Both the position numbers and the translations under genes were made by a program. A stretch of 63,189 bases of DNA, the filler included, from Guillardia theta CCMP2712 (Eukaryota > Protista > Cryptophyta): assembly GCF_000315625.1 (NCBI RefSeq). It is 3 parts of 3 records of this genome, joined end to end, with 100 filler letters (N's around TTAATTAATTAA, not from the genome) between each part and the next. Parts side by side here need not be neighbours in the genome. Positions count along the whole stretch, not along the records: positions 57,239 to 63,189 come from NW_005434177.1; 2 more parts are not named here. One strand, written 5' to 3'. Under the pieces are notes generated by a model. That model was not told where the DNA came from and did not search any database. It saw nothing but the letters and a program-made list of their open reading frames with translations. Shown here in pieces: positions 8,754-63,189 of the stretch (within the stretch, counting starts at the first letter, position 1; each line of letters begins with the position of its first letter).

Positions 8754-9900
8754 TGACTGTCTCAAACTTATCGAGTCTCGCCACGCTTCGATTGAAAGCA
8801 TGCCAACCCAAGATAGAATGCTGCGATGAAAATGAATCGTGCAGCTCAAGTGATTCGTACTGCACCAACTACTCTGAACTGTTCGAAAGACACCTCTCGG
8901 TAATCTTTGATAAGAATCTTCATCAAAGATGATTTGACATTCTTGAAAGGATGAATGGTTAAGTTCGAGATGGTTATACAAGATGGTTCAATCCATCACA
9001 GTCATTTACGCCAAATATTTCCACAACTACACGCTTGAAGGAGCTCATCACATTCCCAAGGATGGATCAGCCATGTTTGTTTCACTTCATTCTACTCATA
9101 ACACAGACATACCCATCGCAGCTCTTGTTCCCCAGCGTTATACTGGACGACCAATCCGATGCTTGCTCCACTCGTGGAGCTGGTGGTATCAGAGCATCTT
9201 TATTCGACTTGGAGGAATAGCCGGAACAAGGAAGTCAGTGCGGCAGATTTTTGACTCGAATCTTCTTGCTGCATGCATACCCGGCGGTGTCGAGGAAGCT
9301 TTCCTCCACGTCGCAAGCAACGGAAAGCATGCTTACGAACTCAACTGGACCTCGTTCAGTGGAAATCCTCGCAGGGGGTTTGCGTCGTTAGCACTGGAGA
9401 TGGGTCCCGGCTTCAAGATCATCCCTTGCTTCAACCAGAACTCGGAAGAGATGCGATGGAATCCGTTCTATGAGATCTGGAGCTTCCTCGGGCTGGACTA
9501 CGCGTACGGTCGTGCCATCAGGAGACTTCCCAAGGGGCTGCGAAACTTCTTGTGGAGCAGTGCGCTGGTTGTTTGGGTCACGTTGGGCATTTTCGCTATC
9601 CCCATTCCTGTCAAGGTGACCGGGCACGTTGCCGAGCCCGTCGTGGTGGAGGAGGGGGACACGGTGGAATCCCTTGCGGTGAGAATTGCTGCTGCTGTGA
9701 GTTGAAGTTGGTGACGAGATGCTCTCAGATCCGTGTGAAGGAAAGGTTCGAAGATCTCATCATCTCCAAGCAGGGGAGGCGTCATAGGTGAGCCTTTGCT
9801 GCAGACTTGGAGTGGAAATTTCTCACTGTTAGCTGCCTGCAGGAGTTACTGGCAAGGATTGAAAGAACGTTTTGCGTTCAAGACAGTCAAGTCAGATTAG
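8754..9900 (+). CDS. TMEM68/DIESL-like (PlsC/DAGAT superfamily) acyltransferase
   Basis: FHNYTLEGAHHIPKDG, HxxxxD-like HSTHNTD, PGGVEEA, YELNW...RRGFASLA, IIPCFNQN. C-terminus LKERFAFKTVKSD*. Intron 8900-8949 and two 3' introns. Start codon uncertain. Confidence 0.8.
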
Positions 9901-11045
9901 AGTGTGCAGGTGTAACATAATGTCAGAGAATATGTATAAAGGATTGGTGGTCATTTTCTGTGATGCTCATGAGCATCTCGAATCGTGAAAATGGAATATT
10001 TGGGTACATCAAGACAGACCTTAGCCAACAAGACTTCACTCGTGAAAAATTCAACCATTTCTTAAACACTGCAGCCTTTCGTAACCTTGCAATCTGTCAA
10101 CAGGATTGAACGAACGAGGAAAATCACCTTGTTCAAGCCTTCTCCATCTGTCTTGCATTGACTTGAGTTTTGTTGGAAGACAAACTTGTGTAAGACTTCT
10201 TCTCAAACCACAACATGAAATTCATCTCACCTCCTCTGATTTACATCACCACAAACAATCCTCCATTCTCTACCCCTCAACTGTAGGACCAACTACCCCC
10301 ACTACCCCTACGTTTAGATACTACCCGTTCAATACGCTGCCTTTTTCACATAAAAGTACCGGTATCAAGTGACATTAGACGTACAAACCAAACAAATGTT
10401 CACCACCCCACCCCCTCTGCCCCTTGATCACTTGATAAAGCCTCTACATGCTCAAATCGCGCCGCGTACCCGCGTTGCTGCCTTTCTCCTCCTCTTCCTA
10501 GAGTTCCTTGTCTCTGTTCACCTCCTCCCTCCTCCCTCATCCTGTCCCTGCCAACTCCTCCCATCCGCATGCTACTTCTCTCCCCCCTGCCCTCTTCCTC
10601 AATTTCAACGACACATGGTTTGCCCTATGTCAATCCTCGTCCTCTGCCTCCGGCTACCTCGAGTCACTCTCACATTTCCTGAGTAAACGAAGATGTTCCT
10701 TGCTCACAATGGATGACCCGCTGCTGCGGCTAGCTGTTGCCTCCCCAACCCTGCTGAGCTTTGCGCATTTCCCCTTGGCCCTGAGAGTAGACTAGCATTC
10801 AGGAGTGTCGAACAAGACTTGTTTGCGAGGCTCTGACTTCTTTCCTTCCGCAGGATTGAGAGGACCACGTTCAGCCATCGCAAGTCGTCAAGACGTCATC
10901 GCGCAACCGGGCAGGACAGAAGGCCCTTAGGGTGCCCAATCTCCCACATCCTGCAGCTCAGAATCTTTACCAGCCCCTCTCCCTCTCCTCCGAGACTGTG
11001 GCATACCAGCCCTTCCCTGACTCCCTCCTCAGCCCTCACTCCAGG

Positions 11046-14000
11046 ATGGGCAAGGGAAAGAGGGACGACGGCGACTTGAGGACTAACTTGCTGGAAGACT
11101 CCAACGGACATGCCGAATGGGGCAGCAACGGAGCAGCGGCTGCCAACAAGTCGGACGATTTTGATATCTCCAACGATGAGGGTGGGGGGGAGAACCACCA
11201 GAGCACAGAGGACGCTGCAGCACAGAGGAAGAGGAACGTCCGCTTCTACACGTCCTCGTCTATCCCCTCCGACGTCGGCAAGGGCCCGGAGCTGGAGTCA
11301 CTGGACTTCGACACCATCAACAACCCTTACTGGGTTGATCTCTCGCGCAGACCCCCGAGGAAGTTCTTCGGGTACACGGGGAAGACTTTCACGCGGTGGA
11401 CACTGTCCATCCTGATCGGGCTGTTCGTGGCCTTGACCGGAAACTTCATCGCGTTCATGATCGAGAATCTGAGCGCGGTCAGGAACAGCGTTCTTCAAAG
11501 CCTCTTCGACTCGGAGCAGCCTGACTCGCACGCCTTCGTCTTCTTTGTCCTCTACAACGGGGCCCTTGTGCTCATGGGAGCGCTGCTGACGGCCACGGTG
11601 GAGCCGGCAGCGGCGGCGGGAGGCATACCTGAGATCAAGGCTTATCTCAACGGAACTCATGTGAAGAACTTCTTGCGGCTGCGAGCCATCTTCGTCAAGG
11701 TCGTCGGGACGATCCTGTCGGTGGCGAGTGGGATGGCGTGCGGGCAGGAGGCTCCGATGATTCACATCGGAGCCGGGATCGCGTCCGGCCTGACGCGAGG
11801 GGAGAAGCATTTCAGGAAGCTGATGTGCTTCAAGCTCTCCAAGCCCAAGAAGTTCGAGNNNNNNNNNNNNNNNNNNNNNNNNNNNNNNNNNNNNNNNNNN
11901 NNNNNNNNNNNNNNNNNNNNNNNNNNNNNNNNNNNNNNNNNNNNNNNNNNNNNNNNNNGCCTCCCGTCCTCCTCCTCCTCCTTTACCTTCCTCCTCCTCC
12001 TCCTCCTCCTCCTCCTTCCTTCCTCCTCCTCCTCCTCCTCCTTTACTCCTCCTCCTCCTCCTCCTCCTCCTCCTCCTCCTCCTCCTCCTCCTCCTCTTCA
12101 ATCTCATCCTCTTGCCTTCAATCTCTCCCTCTTCTGCTGCACCTACCTCCTCCTAACCTTGCTCCTTATGCTTCATCGCCCCCTTTACCTCCACCCCTTG
12201 ACCTGATCGTCTTCCTTGCGCTCTTTCACCCTCCCCTTGCTCCCATCTACCAATGCCGTCTTGCTCTCGCTGGCTTCTACTGACTTTTCAACCCTCCTAC
12301 TTGCAGTTCATCTGTGCAGGAGCAGGAGCGGGGATGGCTGCAGCCTTTGGGGCTCCGGTGGGGGGCGTCCTCTTCGTCTTGGAGGAAGCTGCTTCCCACT
12401 GGTCCCCCCAGCTCATATGGCGAGTCTTCGCAGCCGCGCTGGTCGCGACCTTCACCCTCGCCTTCGTCAAGGCAGGGGAGAACGGAGGAGATATCTCGCT
12501 TGCTGGCCTCCTTTCCTTCGGTACCGTCCAGTCCGTGGAGGACATGAAGCGGCAGCTGGTCAGCTCGGACGGCTCAGTCAAGGTGAGCGCGGTCGACGCT
12601 CCTGTCTACTGGTGGGAGATCGTCTTCTTCGCACTGGTGGGGGTAGGAGGAGGGATCCTCGGCGGGCTGTGGGACCTAGCATGGAACGCGATCGCGCCCT
12701 TCCGGCCCAAGGGTCGCGTCATGCGCGTGGTGGAGGTAGTCATGGTGTCGGTCTTCACGTCTGCGGTTGTCTTCTCGCAGGCCTACTCCTACCCGCAGTG
12801 CCGCAACAACGGGTCCTGGAGCTGCCGGGACAGCGAGAACTGGGGGGACTGGTGCGGGGGGCCCCAGGACAACTCGACCTGCTCCGGGGCCCGGGCCAAG
12901 TGCGTGAACGCGTCCGGATGGGTCTGCCAGGGAGGAGAGAACTCAGGGAAGGCCTGCAGAGGGAGGGGAGACTGCGAGTGGCGCGGGGGGGTGTGCATGC
13001 CGATGGAGACGGAAGAGATCTTCGGGGTGCGCCTCGGGTGCCCCGTCGGGCAGTACGACGAGCTGGCGACCATCTTCTTCGGGACGCGGGAGCAGTCGAT
13101 CGTGCGTCTATTCACACAGGCATCTCCCCGCGAGCCCTTCAGCAACAGCTCCCTCACCATCGCCGGGCTGACCTACATGGTCCTCATGCTCTTCACTTAC
13201 GGCTGCGCCATTCCCGCCGGACTCTTCATGCCCTCCGTCATGGTGGGCGCGTGCCTGGGGAGGCTAGTGGGGCAGCTAGTCAAGCAGTACGTCGAGAGCT
13301 CGGTCTTCAGCGGGGCGTACGCGCTGGCAGGAGCAGCGGCGATGCTGAGCGGGGTGCAGCGGGCGACGATCTCACTGGTCGTGATCATCATAGAGGGGAC
13401 GGCCAACGTTCACTTCCTCCTCCCCATCGTCGTCACGACCTGCACGGCGAAGCTCGTCGGGAACCTCTTTGGGCACGAGGGAGTGTACGAGATCGGGCTG
13501 AGGAGGAAGAAGCTCCGGTTCCTCGAGCACGAGCCGCACTGGATGATGGACCTCTGCACTGCAGGAGACGTCATGTCGACCCCGGTCGTCTGCCTCCCGG
13601 TGGTGGCCAAGGTCGGAGAAATCATAGAGAAGCTAAAGGGTTGCGGGCACAACGGCTTCCCCGTGCTCTCCCTGACCGACGAGGGGGACGAGGGCGCAGG
13701 GCCGCGCCAGCAGCATGAGCGAAGTCCCGTCAACGACTGCAAGTTCGAGGGACTCATCCTCCGAGCTCAACTCCAGCACATGCTCGGAGCTAGGTGAATT
13801 CCCCCTCCCTTCCCCTCTAAACCCCCCCTCGCAGCGCCTACCTTCCACTGCTGCTCCTCTCCTCTCCTCTCCTCTCCTCTCCTCTCCTCTCCTCTCCTCT
13901 CCTCTCCTCTCCTCTCCTCTCCTCTCCTCTCCTCTCCCCTCCTCTCCTCTCCTCTCCTCTCCTCTCCTCACTCTCCGTTAGGTTCCTCGAGGACGGAGCT

Positions 14001-15200
14001 GATCCACAGGGCTTGTGGCATCGCATCACGTACGACAGTCTCGAGCATCTCTCGCTCGACGGCGATCCAGACATGTACGAGCTCATGGCATACAACAACC
14101 GACAAGGAGCCAGCGGACTGCAGGTCCTCCTCCTCCTCCTCCTCCTCCTCCTCCTCCGCCTGCCCTCCCTCTCCTTCCCTCCCTCATCTTTCCTCATCTA
14201 CCTCTTGTTTCATTTTCTTGGTTCACCAAGTTTCAGGCATGGGAATTTCGAGATTTCTCTCCTGAAGATCGCGAGAGATACGTGAACCTTGGCGCGTATA
14301 TGAATTGCTCCTGCTATACGGTCCTCTTTCCCTTCCCCCCTCACCACCACCATCTCCTCCTCCTCCTCCTGCTCCTCCTTCCACCACCTTATCCTCCTCC
14401 TCTTCCTCCTGCTCCTCCTGCTCCTCCTGCTCCTCCTGCTCCTCCTGCTCCTCCTCCTCATCCACCACCACCACCACCACCACCACCATTTCCTCAACCT
14501 CCTCCTCATCCTCCATCCACCACCTCATCATCCTCCACCACCACCACCACCATAACCTCATCCTCCCTTTCTCCTCCTCTCCTCCTTCTGTTCCTCCTCT
14601 CGGAATCATGATGGCAAGCAGGTACTGGAGAGCTGTCCTCTCTCCCGAGCATACAAGCTCTTTCGTAACATGGGCCTCCGCCATCTCCCCGTCGTTGACG
14701 TTCAGAATCGCGTGGTGGGCATGCTCGCTCGAGCCAACTTCTCAGAAGAGGTCAGTCTCTCCTCCGCGCCATCTCCCCTCCGTTGCTCCTTCCTCCTTAT
14801 TTCTCTTTTCTCCTCCTCCTCCTCCTCCTCATCATCATCATCATCATCATCATTATCATCACCATCATCATCATCATCATCCTCTTTGTTGACCAACTTG
14901 CCCCCCCAGGTGATTCATCAGGCCATGACCGTATACTACCACGACGACGAGATTCACCAGCATGCAAGCGAGGAAAAGAACCCGCGGCTCAAGGGATACG
15001 ACACGGTTACCTCCCTCTCTCCTCCTCCCCTCCCCCTTCCTACTCCCCTCCTCCTCCTCCTCCAGCTGACCATTTTCTGTTCTCAGGTCTCGCGGCAGCT
15101 CAACCGACACGCTCTCTACACGGAGGAAGGAGGATACATCGGAGGGCTTGTGACTACCTGGCAGACTCGTTTGGCCTTCCTGCTGCGAGGAGGGACGTGA
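11046..15200 (+). CDS. CLC chloride/anion transporter (CLC-6/7-like) with CBS domains; spans an assembly gap; extra 5' exons possible
   Basis: GGIPEIKAYLNG, GQEAPMIHIG, AAAFGAPVGGVLFVLEE, PAGLFMP, GVYE. CBS segments HNGFPV and MGLRHLPVVD. Confidence 0.93.
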
Positions 15201-57238: not shown

Positions 57239-57288
57239 AAAAAGAAAAAAAGAAAAGAAAAAAAGGCGCACTCGGGTGAGTGAAATAG

Positions 57289-59060
57289 CCTGGACGTAGG
57301 TATGGGGATACAAGCGACTATCGAAGGGTTTCGATCATGGATGGCCTCAAGGGATGCTTTCCAGATTATGATAAAATATCTCAGGTGCGAGTGGAGGTCA
57401 AGCATGACCTTACTAGGAAGTTGAAAATTAATTGCACAGAGGATGGAACTCATTACCTTGATCTGATCTCAACTGTCGAAGAACTTGTCGATTTGTTGCA
57501 TCTGATTGGAAAAGACCGGCTTACTATCTGTATCAATTATGATGGAGCCACCATTACGTTTTCTGCTGGCAATAACAAGAAAGCCACTGATGTAACCATA
57601 ACGATCCTCCCATTTCAGAGTGACTGCACTGACGGAGAATGGAACTTTTGGGAGAAGCTTGCTCGCGAATCTTCTTGTTTGCTTACAATTGCTTACATGC
57701 CTCATCCTGATAGCCCTGAGGTTTTTAAGCGAAGCTTTTGGGTACCCTTTGGACCAGCACTGCGGGAGCTGCAAACTTATGGGATTCAAATTTTCGATGG
57801 CAAGGCTGCTGGTGGGATGCAGAAGCGCCGCGAAGGTAGACATCCAGACAAAGTGATCAGTGTTCTGTTCATAATGAGATCAGACATGCAAGGTCACTGG
57901 TACATTTTCGATATTGGTGGAATGAGAGATGTTGAAAAGATGTTTTGCATGTGTTGCACCGAGCTACTTACAGATCACAGAGCCGGTTCATGGTTTAAAA
58001 TCGTGACAGTCACTGAATCTGACAATCTGATCACCTTTTGTGAGAAACATCGGATTGTGATGGATAGTATCCAGAGGTCTGAATGAAGATTGCAAAAACC
58101 CAGCCTGTTTCAAGTCCTTTCACGAGACGGATTACGCTGAATTCCAAGAAATGATGGATACCCACAATCAAGCAAGAGTCATGGAATCTTTNNNNNNNNN
58201 NNNNNNNNNNNNNNNNNNNNNNNNNNNNNNNNNNNNNNNNNNNNNNNNNNNNNNNNNNNNNNNNNNNNNNNNNNNNNNNNNNNNNNNNNNNNNNNNNNNN
58301 NNNNNNNNNNNNNNNNNNNNNNNNNNNNNNNNNNNNNNNNNNNNNNNNNNNNNNNNNNNNNNNNNNNNNNNNNNNNNNNNNNNNNNNNNNNNNNNNNNNN
58401 NNNNNNNNNNNNNNNNNNNNNNNNNNNNNNNNNNNNNNNNNNNNNNNNNNNNNNNNNNNNNNNNNNNNNNNNNNNNNNNNNNNNNNNNNNNNNNNNNNNN
58501 NNNNNNNNNNNNNNNNNNNNNNNNNNNNNNNNNNNNNNNNNNNTGGCATGACTATGGCAGTAGCTAATCAATTTTATTTGAGTAGCGTACTCATGACACA
58601 GCATCGAGACAAAATTGATCTAGAAGTAGCAAAGCAAATCCCAGCCAGGATTCGAAGTTGGTGTGTGAAATATATAGACGTCGTTGGGGACGTGAAGATG
58701 TTACAGTCATTTTACTTCCATAGCTTGTGCGTCGGCCATATCGGTGATCAGTTCGAAAGCATCATGGAAGAATGTGGAATTCCTTTAGGATTGTTGAATA
58801 TGTCGAACGTTGAAAACAGACATCGCTGGCAAGGTAGACCTTCATTTGCTCAAGCCTTAACAGAAATCAATGCTTTCATGAGCGGAAAGCGTCGCAGAGA
58901 AGATGGAGTTCATCAGCCAATTGCAGAAGATGACTGCACATTCGAGGCAGCGTGGTCGTATTATGCCATTTCTTTGTTATTGATGAACAGTTGGCACAAT
59001 TTAGAGAAAAAGGGAATTGAGTACAAAAAAATTTTAGAGGGAGGTTTAGGCGGTATGTAA
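57289..59060 (+). mobile_element. RAG1/Transib/Chapaev-type DDE transposase (5' truncated, frameshift near 58075, internal gap)
   Basis: ICINYDG (D at 57541), FIMRSDMQ (D at 57883), FCMCC (CxxC at 57946), FYFHSLCVGH (H at 58719), PLGLLNMSNVENRH (E at 58812). No introns seen; AT-richer than host genes. Confidence 0.75.
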
Positions 59061-59120
59061 TAAATTAAATGTTAAAGTTTAAGATATCGCAAGGCGGAAA
59101 GGAGCCGTAATCTGCAAATT

Positions 59121-60457
59121 TCATACGTTCTGTGTAATTGGTGGGAACCTCCAAATCTCTTTGCCATTCCATCCATGCCTGAAAATTTTTGCCCATTTGA
59201 ACGTTAACGAACCAGGACTAAATTTGTAGCGCTTTAGGCTAATCGTTAACGGCCCCTCTACGTAAAGCGATCCTGAAGAGTTTGCAAGCTCGAGAGGGCA
59301 CTCCTTAAATGGTATATTCAAATACCGTTGCACGATGGATGACTTCAAAGATGTCTCAGGTATGATCCAAGAGCATGTGACGAGTGTACTGTAGCTTACA
59401 TACGAACATTGGATCTCACTGGCCTGTTGATTTTCTGCTTGACAAAGCTTCAATAAAAACAAGATTGCGTTCACATCCGCAAGTTCGACATTGAACCGTA
59501 AGGGAGCTTCTTTTGCTGCTTCCAAACTTCGAACCTTGGGTTTTCCTCTGAGCTGCAACCATTTATGCAGACTGTGCCTGACTTTGGACAATTCCCGATA
59601 CAATGAATCAACGATATGGACATGTCGGTTCAAAACGTTAAAATAATTCTGCAGATGATCCGCCGTTAGTTTGAAAGACTTGAAGAAAGAAACTTGACAT
59701 TCCTGACTTTTGCGTTCAGATACGCCAAAATACAACCACCCGACAATGAGCAAGCTTTTCATCGAGATTCCTTTAAGAGAAACTTGCGCACAATTGATGG
59801 ACACTATTCCTCGCATGTCTTGCATTGGACCTCATCCATGTAACTGCTTTGCAAGCAGTGGAATCATCCATGCGATCTCTGATCTGAATCAACCTTGTTG
59901 GAGATTTGATATTCTGTTGAACTTCGGTGAAAACACATCCTTGGTTGTACAGAAATGTAAACTGATACAAAATCATTTGAAACCTCTTTGATCAAACCGT
60001 ACCGATTTTGCTTGTTTACGTCCAAGAAGGAAATTCCCATGGATGGCTGCAAGGCAAAACTCAAATGGCTTGTTTCGTCGTAAAACACACCGGGATTAGA
60101 TTTCTGTGGCCTATTGTTAACGAACATCCTTTGAAAGAAGAATGGTAGCTTGAGAGTCTGGGGTACACCATTGCCATGTTCGTCGTCCACGTCGTCTGGT
60201 TGGGCGACGCTACAAGAAATTCTGATTCTCTCTCGTCCTTTTAATGCTGAGTGTCGTAACAGACTTGGAGAACGCATCTCAAGTCTGTTACAGCCGTGAT
60301 CAGCGACAGACTTATGGAGTATGCGTGAAGAGGAGAGAGAAGCAAGAGGAGAGATGATGCCCGTGGTACCCCAACCCACAATACGGGTCATGGATACAAA
60401 AGGAAAAAGATGGGGTAGGGGTTGCGATTTAGTACCATAATCAAAAACTAAAAACAT
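59121..60457 (-). pseudogene. Unknown convergent ORF broken over three frames
   Basis: Overlapping minus ORFs 59864-60457, 59773-59976, 59121-59825 with the same composition as the transposase; stop 60 nt from the transposase stop. Confidence 0.4.
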
Positions 60458-61166
60458 GTAAAATCCAGTGAAAACAACATATATGAATAGACCAAGTCCT
60501 GATAACTAACTTTTCTCAATATAAAAAATTCAAACCCCAAAAACCACCCCCATGATACAAATAACCCCCCCTTCAACAACAATGTCAAGGGGGCACTAGC
60601 GCGGCAAGATCCGACCGATATGTGTGATCCTCTCCAGGTCTGTGAACTCCAGCCACTCTTCCTCGCTCTCCGCCTGTCGTTGCGCTGCGTCGCTGGTGCC
60701 CCGCTGACCATCCGCCTCAAGCTCCTTGTCGAAGCNNNNNNNNNNNNNNNNNNNNNNNNNNNNNNNNNNNNNNNNNNNNNNNNNNNNNNNNNNNNNNNNN
60801 NNNNNNNNNNNNNNNNNNNNNNNNNNNNNNNNNNNNNNNNNNNNNNNNNNNNNNNNNNNNNNNNNNNNNNNNNNNNNNNNNNNNNNNNNNNNNNNNNNNN
60901 NNNNNNNNNNNNNNNNNNNNNNNNNNNNNNNNNNNNNNNNNNNNNNNNNNNNNNNNNNNNNNNNNNNNNNNNNNNNNNNNNNNNNNNNNNNNNNNNNNNN
61001 NNNNNNNNNNNNNNNNNNNNNNNNNNNNNNNNNNNNNNNNNNNNNNNNNNNNNNNNNNNNNNNNNNNNNNNNNNNNNNNNNNNNNNNNNNNNNNNNNNNN
61101 NNNNNNNNNNNGATGGCTTCTTCATTCGAAGGAAGGAGATGGTGACTGAGATGTCGTCTGCTCGTG

Positions 61167-61712
61167 CTATCTCAGGTCTGTAAGGTGCTTTCCACATGAT
61201 GGACTGTCGTCTCTATCGACTGAGTCTACTATGAGTCCCAGCTCCGTCAACTTCATTTTCAACTTTTCTTCTTGTCGCACATACATCGAGGAGATGCCCA
61301 GGAGAGTCATGGAGATGAAGGAGGTCTCCTCGGTGTCTTCGGTGCCGATGTAAGTCTCGACATTCTGCTGTTTGGCCTCTTTCATCTGTTGCATGAACCA
61401 TGCTTTCGACTCTGGGCTCCATGCGCTCAGAGAGTCTTCAAACAGGTCGCGTCTCGCCTGCCGACATGTCGAGCGGATGGCTTCTGCGATAGCGTCGGGA
61501 GTGCATCCCCCCTCAGCTCTGCAAGCATGAGCTGTCCGACTATTCGGATAACGCTTGGTGAAGCTCTTCACTCTCTCGACGAGGTCGGCCTCTTCGACGT
61601 GGCCTCCTGAGCGCTCACCCTGCGTGTATTGGCATGATTTCCGATACAGCAGGTTGCGAACGCTCTCATCATACTGTAGTACCATACTTAGAAAGCTGTT
61701 TGAACTGCACAA
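61167..61712 (-). CDS. Hypothetical helical protein, possibly frameshifted at both ends
   Basis: 181-codon non-repetitive ORF with no introns seen; overlapping frame continues into the gap. Confidence 0.35.
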   Translation of the reverse strand: MCSSNSFLSMVLQYDESVRNLLYRKSCQYTQGERSGGHVEEADLVERVKSFTKRYPNSRTAHACRAEGGCTPDAIAEAIRSTCRQARRDLFEDSLSAWSPESKAWFMQQMKEAKQQNVETYIGTEDTEETSFISMTLLGISSMYVRQEEKLKMKLTELGLIVDSVDRDDSPSCGKHLTDLR

Positions 61713-61845
61713 ACCTCTTGCTCGCAGCTTCCTCCGGTGCCCTTGCGCTCTCCCCTCTCCTCCCCCCTAGTCTCCTTGTCGGTCTTCGAGGTTGGCGCTG
61801 TGTGCATTGCTTGTGGCGGAGGAGGTGGCTGGGGTGGAGAGACGG

Positions 61846-61862
61846 CTAAACCCTAAACCCTA
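61846..61862. repeat. Short telomere-type (CCCTAAA) repeat / telo-box
   Basis: CTAAACCCTAAACCCTA. Confidence 0.6.
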
Positions 61863-62641
61863 TTATTATTATTATGTGAGTTTATTAGAATGCTAGAATG
61901 TTGCTCGGCCTCCTTGTGGGCTTTTGCAATTTGATCCTAGTCTAAAGAGGCGCGCGAGCACTGGGAGTACACGGCCTACAATGCGANNNNNNNNNNNNNN
62001 NNNNNNNNNNNNNNNNNNNNNNNNNNNNNNNNNNNNNNNNNNNNNNNNNNNNNNNNNNNNNNNNNNNNNNNNNNNNNNNNNNNNNNNNNNNNNNNNNNNN
62101 NNNNNNNNNNNNNNNNNNNNNNNNNNNNNNNNNNNNNNNNNNNNNNNNNNNNNNNNNNNNNNNNNNNNNNNNNNNNNNNNNNNNNNNNNNNNNNNNNNNN
62201 NNNNNNNNNNNNNNNNNNNNNNNNNNNNNNNNNNNNNNNNNNNNNNNNNNNNNNNNNNNNNNNNNNNNNNNNNNNNNNNNNNNNNNNNNNNNNNNNNNNN
62301 NNNNNNNNNNNNNNNNNNNNNNNNNNNNNNNNNNNNNNNNNNNNNNNNNNNNNNNNNNNNNNNNNNNNNNNNNNNNNNNNNNNNNNNNNNNNNNNNNNNN
62401 NNNNNNNNNNNNNNNNNNNNNNNNNNNNNNNNNGCGGAGGAAGGAATCAGTCACCGCGATTTCATCAGCCACTCGCTATCTCGGATCTATACGGGAGCCT
62501 CCACATGATGCCTTCATCTCTTGCACTGAGTCTAGCTTTCGGAGAGAGCGAAGCGATGGAGGGGAGTACACCTGACTCTGTTCAGCGAGGACCCGAAGAT
62601 CAGAGAGGCGCTCGCAGTCCGAGTCGACAGTTGATCGCTTT

Positions 62642-63055
62642 GTGTCCAGAAATAAGTTGAAGAAGGCATCCAGGATGCAGAAGAAGGCAGGCCGCAGCGA
62701 CGACAAGGCGATCAAGATCATCATCAAGTCGACGGCGGCATCTGGTCGCTTCACGAGGAAGGAGATGGAGGGGCTGTGCAACGGCGGCAACACGTCCATC
62801 GCAAGAGTCAAGAGAGTCTTGTTGGAAATCGCTAACAGGCTCGAGATCAAAGTGGAAGGCATCGACATGGAGGAGGATTTGAACACTAAGTCCTGGAACG
62901 GGTCCAAGCTATGCATCTTCCTCGGCTCCACGGAGGATGCTCGACGCATGATGAAGGAGCTGCCCTTCTCTCTAGAAGGCGCAGCCACCAAGCTCGAAGC
63001 AGTCGGCTTCGACAAGGAGCCTGAGGCGGCTCATTCTGGGGTCAAACCGCGGTAG
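62642..63055 (+). CDS. Hypothetical basic protein fragment with possible helix-turn-helix
   Basis: FTRKEMEGLCNGGNTSIARVKRV resembles an HTH; in-frame stop upstream suggests decay. Confidence 0.3.
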   Translation: MSRNKLKKASRMQKKAGRSDDKAIKIIIKSTAASGRFTRKEMEGLCNGGNTSIARVKRVLLEIANRLEIKVEGIDMEEDLNTKSWNGSKLCIFLGSTEDARRMMKELPFSLEGAATKLEAVGFDKEPEAAHSGVKPR

Positions 63056-63189
63056 TTTTCGTCCTATATTCTCAAGGGGGTGGTGAATGGGAAAATGGGG
63101 GTACACGGTGTGTGATTCGCGCAGGTTGAAATTTTGTACTGTTCAAATTCAAAGCCCTAAAGTTAAGCGATTAGACCGCTAATCACAAG

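What the first reader, a model, noticed from the sequence alone, without database searches (positions are those of the whole stretch)
57289..59060. RAG1/Transib-like transposase with full DDE triad and split Zn site in a probable cryptophyte
Seen: NYDG (D69 of ORF 57337), RSDMQ (D183), CMCC 21 aa later, then after the gap YFHSLCVGH and G-x-x-x-x-S-N-V-E-N-R-H. Known: mouse RAG1 uses D600/D708/E962 with Zn ligands C727/C730 and H937/H942 (SCDG; GYDEK..YICTLC; NYFHKTLAH..IGAWASEGNE), an order shared with Transib and Chapaev transposases. The D-D spacing here is 114 aa versus 108 in RAG1, and the YFH tripeptide is identical. The segment SCLLTIAYMPHPDSPEVF..ALRELQ parallels RAG1 CKPLCLMLADESDHETL. 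Inference: a divergent member of the RAG1/Transib/CMC clade, which I do not know as described from cryptophytes. This copy carries a frameshift.
Basis: partly seen in the sequence, partly recalled or inferred. Interest (0 to 1): 0.85.

Follow-up and report, generated by a model that had tools for sequence, protein, structure and literature searches.

The report
RAG1-fold transposon in Guillardia theta
The two reading frames are the halves of one cut-and-paste transposase whose predicted fold matches RAG1 and Transib; it belongs to an undescribed 4.6-kb two-gene transposon family of cryptophyte algae, and this window holds only a low-quality duplicate of an intact copy.

Summary

The two halves are one gene.
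- An intact 767-aa paralogue (P0003) and the main Guillardia theta scaffold copy (GUITHDRAFT_110778) both bridge the gap.
- Contigs of two sequencing runs fill it with 381 bases.
- The window piece is a 98-99.8% identical, indel-ridden duplicate of that scaffold locus, so the frameshift (extra G at 58076) is probably a sequencing error.

An AlphaFold model of the full protein matches only RAG1, BbRAGL and HzTransib at the top. Foldseek gives E 1.8e-8 to 2.8e-5, and VIA gives Z 16-17 over about 430 residues. No sequence or profile search reaches RAG1, Transib or Pfam Transposase_21.

Copies in six flanking contexts define a 4,612-bp element with 5'-CAT...ATG-3' ends. It carries a second, convergent gene conserved across subfamilies. 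A second subfamily has roughly 25-bp inverted repeats and a 3-bp target duplication.

My reading is a new lineage of the CACTA/Mirage/Chapaev/Transib ("CMCT") clade, seen so far only in cryptophytes (G. theta, Hanusia phi). Placement within the clade is unresolved. I found no paper describing it.

The parts
57239..57302 (.). A-rich leader of the small scaffold; not part of the element as seen elsewhere
   Evidence: It does not align to L003 or L007. Run contigs do not cover it.
57303..58191 (+). Transposase, first segment (P0003 residues about 185-479). It contains ORF A (57337-58086) and, after the frameshift, its continuation in the next frame up to the gap.
   Evidence: 97.5% identical to L003 and 99.2% to L007. 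Translations.
57541..57543 (+). Proposed catalytic D1 (D69 of ORF A = D264 of P0003), in the NYDG motif
   Evidence: It lies on strand E256-266 of the model. It is conserved in every member that has this region.
57883..57885 (+). Proposed catalytic D2 (D183 = D378 of P0003), in the RSDMQG motif
   Evidence: Invariant column. It lies directly after strand E367-377 of the model.
57946..57957 (+). CxxC pair (C204/C207 = C399/C402 of P0003), proposed Zn ligands
   Evidence: FC-x-x-C is conserved in the family. Coordinates.
58076..58076 (+). Extra G that breaks the frame in the window only
   Evidence: The X1, X2 and X7 contigs are one letter shorter here.
58192..58576 (.). Assembly gap (N, 58192-58543) plus 33 unsupported bases (58544-58576). 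The real sequence here is 381 bases encoding P0003 residues 480-606, which include the conserved C-x2-H motif.
58577..59060 (+). Transposase, last segment (within ORF B 58548-59060), ending at the stop codon
   Evidence: 98.6% identical to L003 and 99% to L007.
58719..58739 (+). H-x5-H pair (H58/H64 of ORF B = H655/H661 of P0003), proposed Zn ligands
   Evidence: Invariant columns. Coordinates.
58812..58814 (+). Proposed catalytic E (E89 of ORF B = E686 of P0003), in the NVENRH motif
   Evidence: It lies on helix H682-708 of the model. E is kept in all full-length members.
59121..60457 (-). ORF2, a convergent second gene of the element. It is intact at 444-448 aa in L007, L006 and L012. In the window it is split into 59121-59825 and 59864-60457 by 1-base indels.
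   Evidence: dN/dS is 0.31-0.46.
60613..60622 (+). Right terminus of the element (GACCGATATG). It is an imperfect inverted repeat of the left terminus CATATTGGTC.
   Evidence: Homology among copies in six flanking contexts stops here.
60623..63189 (.). Flank: a very high-copy repeat into which the element is inserted. It is not part of the element.
   Evidence: Its depth is 100-700 times that of the element. Empty paralogous sites are in L007.

Best explanation
The two ORFs are the halves of one DDE cut-and-paste transposase. The gene model is 826 aa and the continuous ORF is 767 aa. The transposase belongs to a 4.6-kb autonomous DNA transposon of Guillardia theta.

The protein has the RAG1/Transib architecture:
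- an RNase H-like catalytic domain carrying D264, D378 and E686 (P0003 numbering);
- an insertion between D2 and E that carries a CxxC pair and a His pair, presumed to bind zinc.

This places it in the CACTA/EnSpm-Mirage-Chapaev-Transib ("CMCT") clade, as a lineage that sequence methods cannot yet attach to any named member.

The element is bounded by short inverted ends 5'-CAT...ATG-3'. It carries a second, convergent gene (ORF2) of unknown role, and in one directly readable insertion it is flanked by a 3-bp target duplication.

Inferred mechanism: the transposase binds the inverted ends, nicks them and cuts the element out with the DDE/Mg2+ centre. Whether it forms hairpins on the flanking DNA, as RAG and Transib do, is untested. 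It then integrates with a short staggered cut.

The window is a redundant, error-rich small scaffold of the same locus as JH993011.1. Its frameshift, the broken ORF2 and the stop beside the gap are most likely artefacts.
For: Halves joined:
- The intact ORFs in L003 and L007 bridge the gap.
- Contigs of runs X1 and X2 also bridge it.

Fold:
- The AF2 model of P0003 has core pLDDT 70-95.
- The top 47 Foldseek PDB hits are all RAG1, BbRAGL or HzTransib, with E from 1.8e-8 to 2.8e-5. The next is the P element at 5e-3.
- VIA gives Z 16.9 (429 aa, rmsd 4.3) to RAG1 and 16.8 (405 aa) to HzTransib. Model residues 170-755 correspond to mouse RAG1 461-1007. By comparison, the P element scores 11.7, ISCth4 9.5 and Hermes 7.7.
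- Language-model features of each half independently point to RAG1 RNase H/ZnC2 (0.97) and ZnH2 (0.94) clusters.
- D264 lies on a strand, D378 at the end of a strand and E686 on a helix.
- The motifs are conserved at 22-35% identity.

Mobile element:
- Homology boundaries are sharp and identical in six flank contexts.
- Paralogous empty sites exist.
- Subfamily 2 in L013 has a roughly 25-bp TIR and a GTG/GTG duplication.
- There is an internally deleted copy (L002), truncated copies (L014, L015) and a relic (L013 18005-18498).
- dN/dS is 0.25-0.34.

Host.

CMCT definition: C(2)C and H(3-4)H motifs, CA..TG ends and 2-5 bp TSD (PMC12730594).

Window is an error-rich duplicate: it is colinear with L007, including the flank, and differs by 26 single-base indels against 19 mismatches.
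Against: - No sequence-level link to any named family. Pfam is blank at E<=10 for 14 members. PDB sequence and profile searches are blank.
- The fold evidence rests on a predicted model (mean pLDDT 65) built from a 13-sequence alignment.
- I could not read coordinates, so convergence of the three acids and of the Cys/His ligands is not shown.
- The His spacing is 5, not 3-4.
- At the window's own locus, the occupied and empty sites show no target duplication.
- Two of the three 3-bp duplications depend on re-pairing flanks of metagenome assemblies.
- RNA-seq run X22 shows almost no reads on the element.
- Transposition has not been shown.
Confidence: 0.85

Rival explanations
1. It belongs inside CMC proper (EnSpm/CACTA-, Mirage- or Chapaev-like) and resembles RAG1 only because all CMCT transposases share that fold.
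For: - The 3-bp duplication and CA..TG ends match EnSpm/CACTA (PMC12730594).
- Atlas models of Transposase_21 proteins fit with TM 0.40-0.50 over 364-481 residues, as well as the arthropod RAG1_RNase_H cluster does.
- Feature hits include Transposase_21 clusters at 0.92-0.94.
- Two-gene organisation is common in CACTA elements (own knowledge).
Against: - No Pfam PF02992 hit, even at E<=10.
- The feature search ranks RAG1 clusters above Transposase_21 (0.97 against 0.94).
- The best Atlas structural hits are unnamed clusters, not Transposase_21.
Confidence: 0.35
2. It is a true member or sister of the Transib/RAG1 lineage, and so the first outside animals and their close relatives.
For: - The best solved-structure matches are RAG1 and HzTransib.
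- The top feature hits are RAG1 clusters.
- A second gene in convergent orientation recalls RAG1L/RAG2L (own knowledge).
- TSD length is now reported to vary from 2 to 5 bp within Transib (preprint 10.64898/2026.08.26.747230).
Against: - No sequence similarity to RAG1 or HzTransib chains, even with profiles.
- The ends are not RSS-like (CATATTGG and CATTCTGGGG).
- There is no 5-bp TSD.
- ORF2 shows no kelch-like repeats and no resemblance to RAG2.
- PDB holds no CMC structure, so the comparison is one-sided.
Confidence: 0.15
3. It is a domesticated or single-copy host gene pair, no longer a mobile element.
For: - Depth over the element is flat and low compared with the flanking repeat, and contigs show no variants. 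This suggests one or a few copies per genome.
- Both ORFs are under purifying selection.
Against: - Near-identical copies (95-97%) sit in at least five different left flanks and four right flanks, with boundaries exactly at the inverted ends.
- Paralogous empty sites exist.
- Deleted, truncated and relic copies exist.
- Several diverged subfamilies coexist in one genome.
Confidence: 0.07
4. The motifs are a chance resemblance in an unrelated protein.
For: There is no family-level sequence hit.
Against: - The full-length fold match has Z 16-17, with 47 consecutive RAG1/Transib hits.
- The motifs are conserved across subfamilies.
- The anatomy is that of a TIR-bounded mobile element.
Confidence: 0.01

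Closest known systems
CMCT clade of DDE transposons (EnSpm/CACTA, Mirage, Chapaev, Transib, Plavaka, ESTA, Lanisha), as defined in PMC12730594
   Same: [quoted passage not shown]
- 5'-CA..TG-3' termini.
- Short target duplication (3 bp at L013).
- RAG1-like fold. HHpred-level similarity to RAG1 is also how ESTA was recognised.
   Different: - No detectable sequence similarity to any named lineage.
- His spacing of 5 instead of 3-4.
- An extra conserved C-x2-H motif in the middle of the protein.
- An element-encoded ORF2 that matches no known family.
- Found so far only in cryptophytes.
RAG1 / BbRAGL / HzTransib (solved structures such as 6dbo, 6b40, 6pqx)
   Same: - The predicted structure aligns over about 430 residues, from the dimerisation/pre-RNase H region to the C-terminal domain (Z 16-17).
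- Same order of D, D, Cys pair, His pair and E.
   Different: - About 10-14% identity, found in structural alignments only.
- No nonamer-binding domain match was shown.
- The ends are not RSS-like.
- No 5-bp duplication.
- The partner gene is not RAG2-like.
EnSpm/CACTA transposons (Pfam Transposase_21, PF02992)
   Same: - 3-bp target duplication and termini beginning with CA.
- A two-protein element.
- Comparable predicted fold (Atlas TM 0.40-0.50).
   Different: - No PF02992, DUF4218 or DUF4216 match.
- Termini are CATAT/CATTC, not CACTA.
- No subterminal repeat arrays were noticed.

Membership tests
Transib/RAG1 | Sequence homology to the Transib/RAG1 core | tested here: not met
   No RAG1 or HzTransib chain appears at E<=10 with a single sequence, the full profile or sub-profiles. 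Pfam shows no RAG1 family. It is uncertain whether this Pfam copy holds the newest split RAG1 models.
Transib/RAG1 | RAG1-like multi-domain fold (pre-RNase H, RNase H, ZnC2, ZnH2, CTD) | tested here: met
   Foldseek E from 1.8e-8. VIA Z 16-17, with model 170-755 matching RAG1 461-1007 and HzTransib 21-477. This rests on a predicted model.
Transib/RAG1 | 5-bp target site duplication | tested here: not met
   3 bp (GTG) at L013 and none at L007. A 2026 preprint reports 2-5 bp within Transib, so this test is weak.
Transib/RAG1 | RSS-like inverted repeats (CACAATG-type heptamer plus nonamer) | tested here: not met
   The ends are CATATTGGTC...GACCGRTATG and CATTCTGGGG....
Transib/RAG1 | Three catalytic acids converge at one site | not testable with these tools
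Only the placement on secondary-structure elements fits: D264 on a strand, D378 after a strand, E686 on a helix.
CMC (EnSpm/Mirage/Chapaev) | Match to Transposase_21 or related models | tested here: not met
   No hit at E<=10 in 14 members.
CMC (EnSpm/Mirage/Chapaev) | 2-4 bp TSD and CA..TG termini | tested here: met
   CAT...ATG ends in two subfamilies and a 3-bp GTG duplication at L013. The exception is the L007 locus, which has no TSD.
CMCT clade | [quoted passage not shown] | tested here: inconclusive
   C(2)C is present and conserved (C399/C402). The His pair is conserved but spaced by 5 residues (H655/H661).
CMCT clade | Phylogenetic placement among CMCT transposases | not testable with these tools
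   No reference CMC or Transib sequences could be obtained.
BAH/Tudor-type chromatin readers (for ORF2) | BAH or Tudor beta-barrel fold | tested here: inconclusive
   Feature hits to BAH clusters score 0.92 but recognition is low. Foldseek finds Sir3 BAH at E about 0.09. VIA gives Z 4.4-6.2 to Tudor, BAH and PWWP domains over residues 114-227, below the Z 8 noise level. The model pLDDT is 52. Pfam is blank.

The most novel reading that the evidence does not exclude
A still-active two-gene transposon in a cryptophyte that parallels the RAG system without descending from it. One gene is a RAG1-fold transposase. The other is an obligatory, convergently encoded partner whose beta-barrel domain reads chromatin (BAH/Tudor-like). 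It would steer integration much as the RAG2 PHD finger ties RAG1 to H3K4me3. The family would be a deep, separate branch of the CMC/Transib radiation, showing that the RAG1 architecture predates animals.
Probability: 0.12. Interest if true: 0.75.

Novelty: new variant of a known kind. Interest (0 to 1): 0.5.

Why it matters
RAG1, the enzyme that assembles antibody genes, descends from Transib-type transposases, and solved structures exist only for RAG1, RAGL and one insect Transib.

This family adds an intact, apparently recently mobile relative from a cryptophyte alga, a lineage far from animals, fungi and plants. It has the same overall architecture but no recognisable sequence similarity.
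- It widens the known range of this fold.
- It gives a new outgroup for rooting the CMC/Transib/RAG1 tree.
- It offers a compact two-gene element that could be tested for hairpin-forming cleavage and for use as a genetic tool in cryptophytes.

It also corrects several G. theta "hypothetical protein" annotations. One affected gene model, next to the element, merges ORF2 with a flanking repeat.

Tried and rejected
- Pfam scans of all window ORFs, the full-length proteins and 14 family members gave nothing relevant.
- PDB sequence searches with single sequences, the full profile and two sub-profiles (RNase H part, His/E part) found no RAG1 or Transib hit, so no residue-level alignment could be obtained.
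With P0003 it gave only two metagenome loci.
- Searches for inverted repeats in L001 and L004 found no convincing ends, probably because the contigs stop short of them.
- My first guess of the left end, from a 10-mer in L003 at 156-165, was wrong. The true left end is L003 position 88.
- ORF2 remains unresolved. The AF2 model is poor. Foldseek PDB, the Atlas shape search and VIA wide gave only sub-threshold BAH/Tudor hints.
- Complex prediction of the transposase core with ORF2 gave no verdict (score 0.00, and the partner's own fold was uncertain). This is evidence neither way.
- Yuan & Wessler 2011 is not held in the library.
- Papers on Transib, EnSpm, CACTA or RAG1-like elements in Guillardia or cryptophytes: none found. 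Repbase could not be consulted, so an unpublished Repbase entry for G. theta cannot be excluded.

Full report
**What is in the window.**
- The piece 57239-63189 has two + strand ORFs around an N gap: ORF A (57337-58086, 249 aa) and ORF B (58548-59060, 170 aa).
- After ORF A stops, the next frame continues (GLNEDCKNP...VMES) up to the gap.
- Neither ORF hits Pfam or any PDB sequence.

**Are the halves one gene?** Yes.
- An exhaustive HMMER search found a 767-aa protein, P0003, 98% identical to ORF A, that also contains ORF B.
- Its contig, L003, is colinear with window 57303-58191 (97.5%) and 58577-59134 (98.6%). It has 381 bases where the window has 385 positions.
- A cluster look-up showed the same protein family member in Guillardia theta CCMP2712: XP_005830340.1, GUITHDRAFT_110778, on the 593-kb scaffold JH993011.1. 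It also identified the window's own ORF on a 5,951-bp contig.
- The scaffold locus, L007, is colinear with the window from 57303 to 63153 at 98-99.8%. This includes the right flank and all three N gaps.
- Contigs of two sequencing runs (X1, X2) join 58191 to 58577 with 381 letters between.

**The window is a degraded duplicate.**
- Its differences from L007 are mostly single-base indels, 26 against 19 substitutions. They cluster near contig ends.
- They include the extra G at 58076 that makes the frameshift.
- They also include four extra bases at 59926-59953 that break the second gene.
- The 33 bases after the gap (58544-58576, with a TAA) and the first 64 bases of the piece match nothing.
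- So the window is a redundant, low-quality assembly of a locus that is intact on the main scaffold. There the transposase ORF is 10297-12537 with no frameshift, and ORF2 is 12599-13933.

**What the protein is.**
- I aligned 13 relatives and folded P0003. Mean pLDDT is 65, and 70-95 through most of residues 200-760.
- In Foldseek against the PDB, the first 47 hits (E 1.8e-8 to 2.8e-5) are all mouse or zebrafish RAG1, amphioxus BbRAGL or HzTransib. The next are the P element (5e-3) and Hermes.
- VIA-align scores:

| Match | Z | Aligned residues |
|---|---|---|
| RAG1 | 16.9 | 429 (rmsd 4.3) |
| HzTransib | 16.8 | 405 |
| P element | 11.7 | 372 |
| ISCth4 | 9.5 | 276 |
| Hermes | 7.7 | 331 |

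- The RAG1 match covers model 170-755 against RAG1 461-1007, which is everything from the dimerisation domain to the C-terminal domain.
- Language-model features of ORF A alone give RAG1 RNase H/ZnC2 clusters at 0.97. Those of the C-terminal half give RAG1 ZnH2 at 0.94.
- In the model, D264 lies on a strand, D378 directly after a strand and E686 on a helix, as in an RNase H-fold DDE enzyme.
- D378, H655 and H661 are invariant. D264, the CxxC pair and E686 are kept in all members that cover them, at 22-35% identity.
- I could not read model coordinates, so convergence of the triad is inferred, not shown.

**Which family?**
[quoted passage not shown] One of them (ESTA) was recognised through HHpred similarity to RAG1.
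- The present family fits this description, except that the His pair is H-x5-H.
- Structure cannot discriminate within the clade. No CMC transposase is solved, and Atlas models of Transposase_21 proteins (TM 0.40-0.50), an arthropod RAG1_RNase_H cluster (0.48/0.55) and unnamed Mucoromycota and rotifer clusters (up to 0.50/0.66) fit similarly.
- Sequence methods find no link to any named family.
- I therefore file it as a CMCT-clade lineage of unresolved position.

**The element.**
- Six contigs and scaffolds carrying 95-97% identical copies lose similarity at exactly the same two points. This defines a 4,612-bp element (L007 9483-14094) with ends 5'-CATATTGGTC...GACCGRTATG-3'. The right end is window 60622.
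- It is inserted in a very high-copy repeat. Two paralogous empty sites in L007 read ...CTGCCTCCAT|TGTGATCC..., and one X7 contig joins the same left flank directly to window 60623. So this locus shows no target duplication.
- A second subfamily is P0029, GUITHDRAFT_162260, in L013 (JH992983.1). It has a 4,933-bp element (9275-14207) with roughly 25-bp inverted repeats starting CATTCTGGGG, flanked by GTG on both sides.
- In metagenome assemblies of subfamily 1, the flanks pair as GCG/GCG and CGG/CGG if two assemblies swapped flanks. L010 supports one of these pairings.
- A 2026 preprint shows that TSD length varies within Transib, so it is not decisive.

**A second gene.**
- ORF2 lies tail-to-tail with the transposase and inside the inverted ends, in three subfamilies that share only 28-32% identity. 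It is 444-448 aa in subfamily 1, 380-401 aa in subfamily 2 and 383 aa in L004.
- It is under purifying selection (dN/dS 0.31-0.46), as is the transposase (0.25-0.34).
- Its function is open. Features suggest BAH (0.92). Weak fold matches to Sir3, DNMT1 and ORC1 BAH domains and to PHF19 and MTF2 Tudor domains stay below noise. The model itself is poor.
- A complex prediction with the transposase gave no verdict.

**Life style and range.**
- The family has at least five sublineages in G. theta and Hanusia phi. Some come from transcriptomes.
- It includes an internally deleted copy (L002), truncated copies (L014, L015), a copy with a premature stop (L001) and a relic fragment.
- Only about ten representatives appear among 1.84 billion clustered proteins.
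- In RNA-seq run X22 the element has almost no reads, while the flanking repeat is heavily transcribed.
- I found no paper describing such elements in cryptophytes. Repbase could not be checked.

**Verdict.**
- The clade-level interpretation is supported.
- The specific RAG1/Transib label is not established.
- The frameshift is probably an artefact.
- The finding is a new lineage of a known kind of transposon and is moderately interesting.

Noticed in passing
window 57239-63189 versus L007 (JH993011.1:548476-571012): The whole 5,951-bp piece is a redundant, indel-rich duplicate of a locus already present on a large G. theta scaffold. Its N gaps correspond to 381, 376 and 447 real bases there.
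   Followed up: yes
window 60623-63189: The flank is an extremely high-copy repeat, with summed contig depth 100-700 times that of the element. It is strongly transcribed in X22 and includes a short telomere-like CCCTAAA run at about 61847-61862. The element sits directly in front of the ATG of a repeat-encoded minus-strand ORF (MEAASPSSQEDMQL...). No Pfam match.
   Followed up: partly
window 60712-60735 and 63006-63029: There is a 24-nt inverted match. Contigs of three runs join 60719 to 63024 on opposite strands, so copies of the flanking repeat also occur head-to-head.
   Followed up: no
L007 13717-15979 (NCBI gene model, 567 aa): The annotated G. theta gene next to the transposase appears to merge ORF2 of the transposon with the flanking repeat ORF. 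It is probably a mis-annotation.
   Followed up: no
L003, L006 and L008-L012; runs X6 and X11-X20: Copies 95-100% identical to the G. theta element turn up in freshwater, lake and runoff metagenomes, although G. theta is a marine alga (own knowledge). This suggests either close freshwater relatives or carry-over of G. theta DNA.
   Followed up: no
L013 18005-18498, 20111-20601 and 16548-16816: The same G. theta scaffold holds three more items within 6 kb of the subfamily-2 element. One is a relic of another subfamily's transposase C-terminus. One is a piggyBac-type gene (DDE_Tnp_1_7). One is a 272-bp stretch 84% identical to the 5' region of L001. Together they look like a transposon-rich patch.
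   Followed up: partly
P0020 residues 1-62; L003 619-837; L001 674-895; N-termini of P0008, P0013 and P0029: There is a conserved N-terminal module (K-x-SG-x-SL...LA-x-KA...GEP-D/N-V-N/T-x-FL-x-GLG). In subfamily 1 an intron separates it from the core, and in subfamily 2 it is fused. It could be the end-binding domain. It has no Pfam match and low model confidence.
   Followed up: partly
P0003 C517/H520 (falls under the window gap 58192-58543): A C-x2-H motif at the start of a long helix is conserved across the whole family and lies between the CxxC and His pairs. Its role is unknown, and the window cannot show it because of the gap.
   Followed up: no
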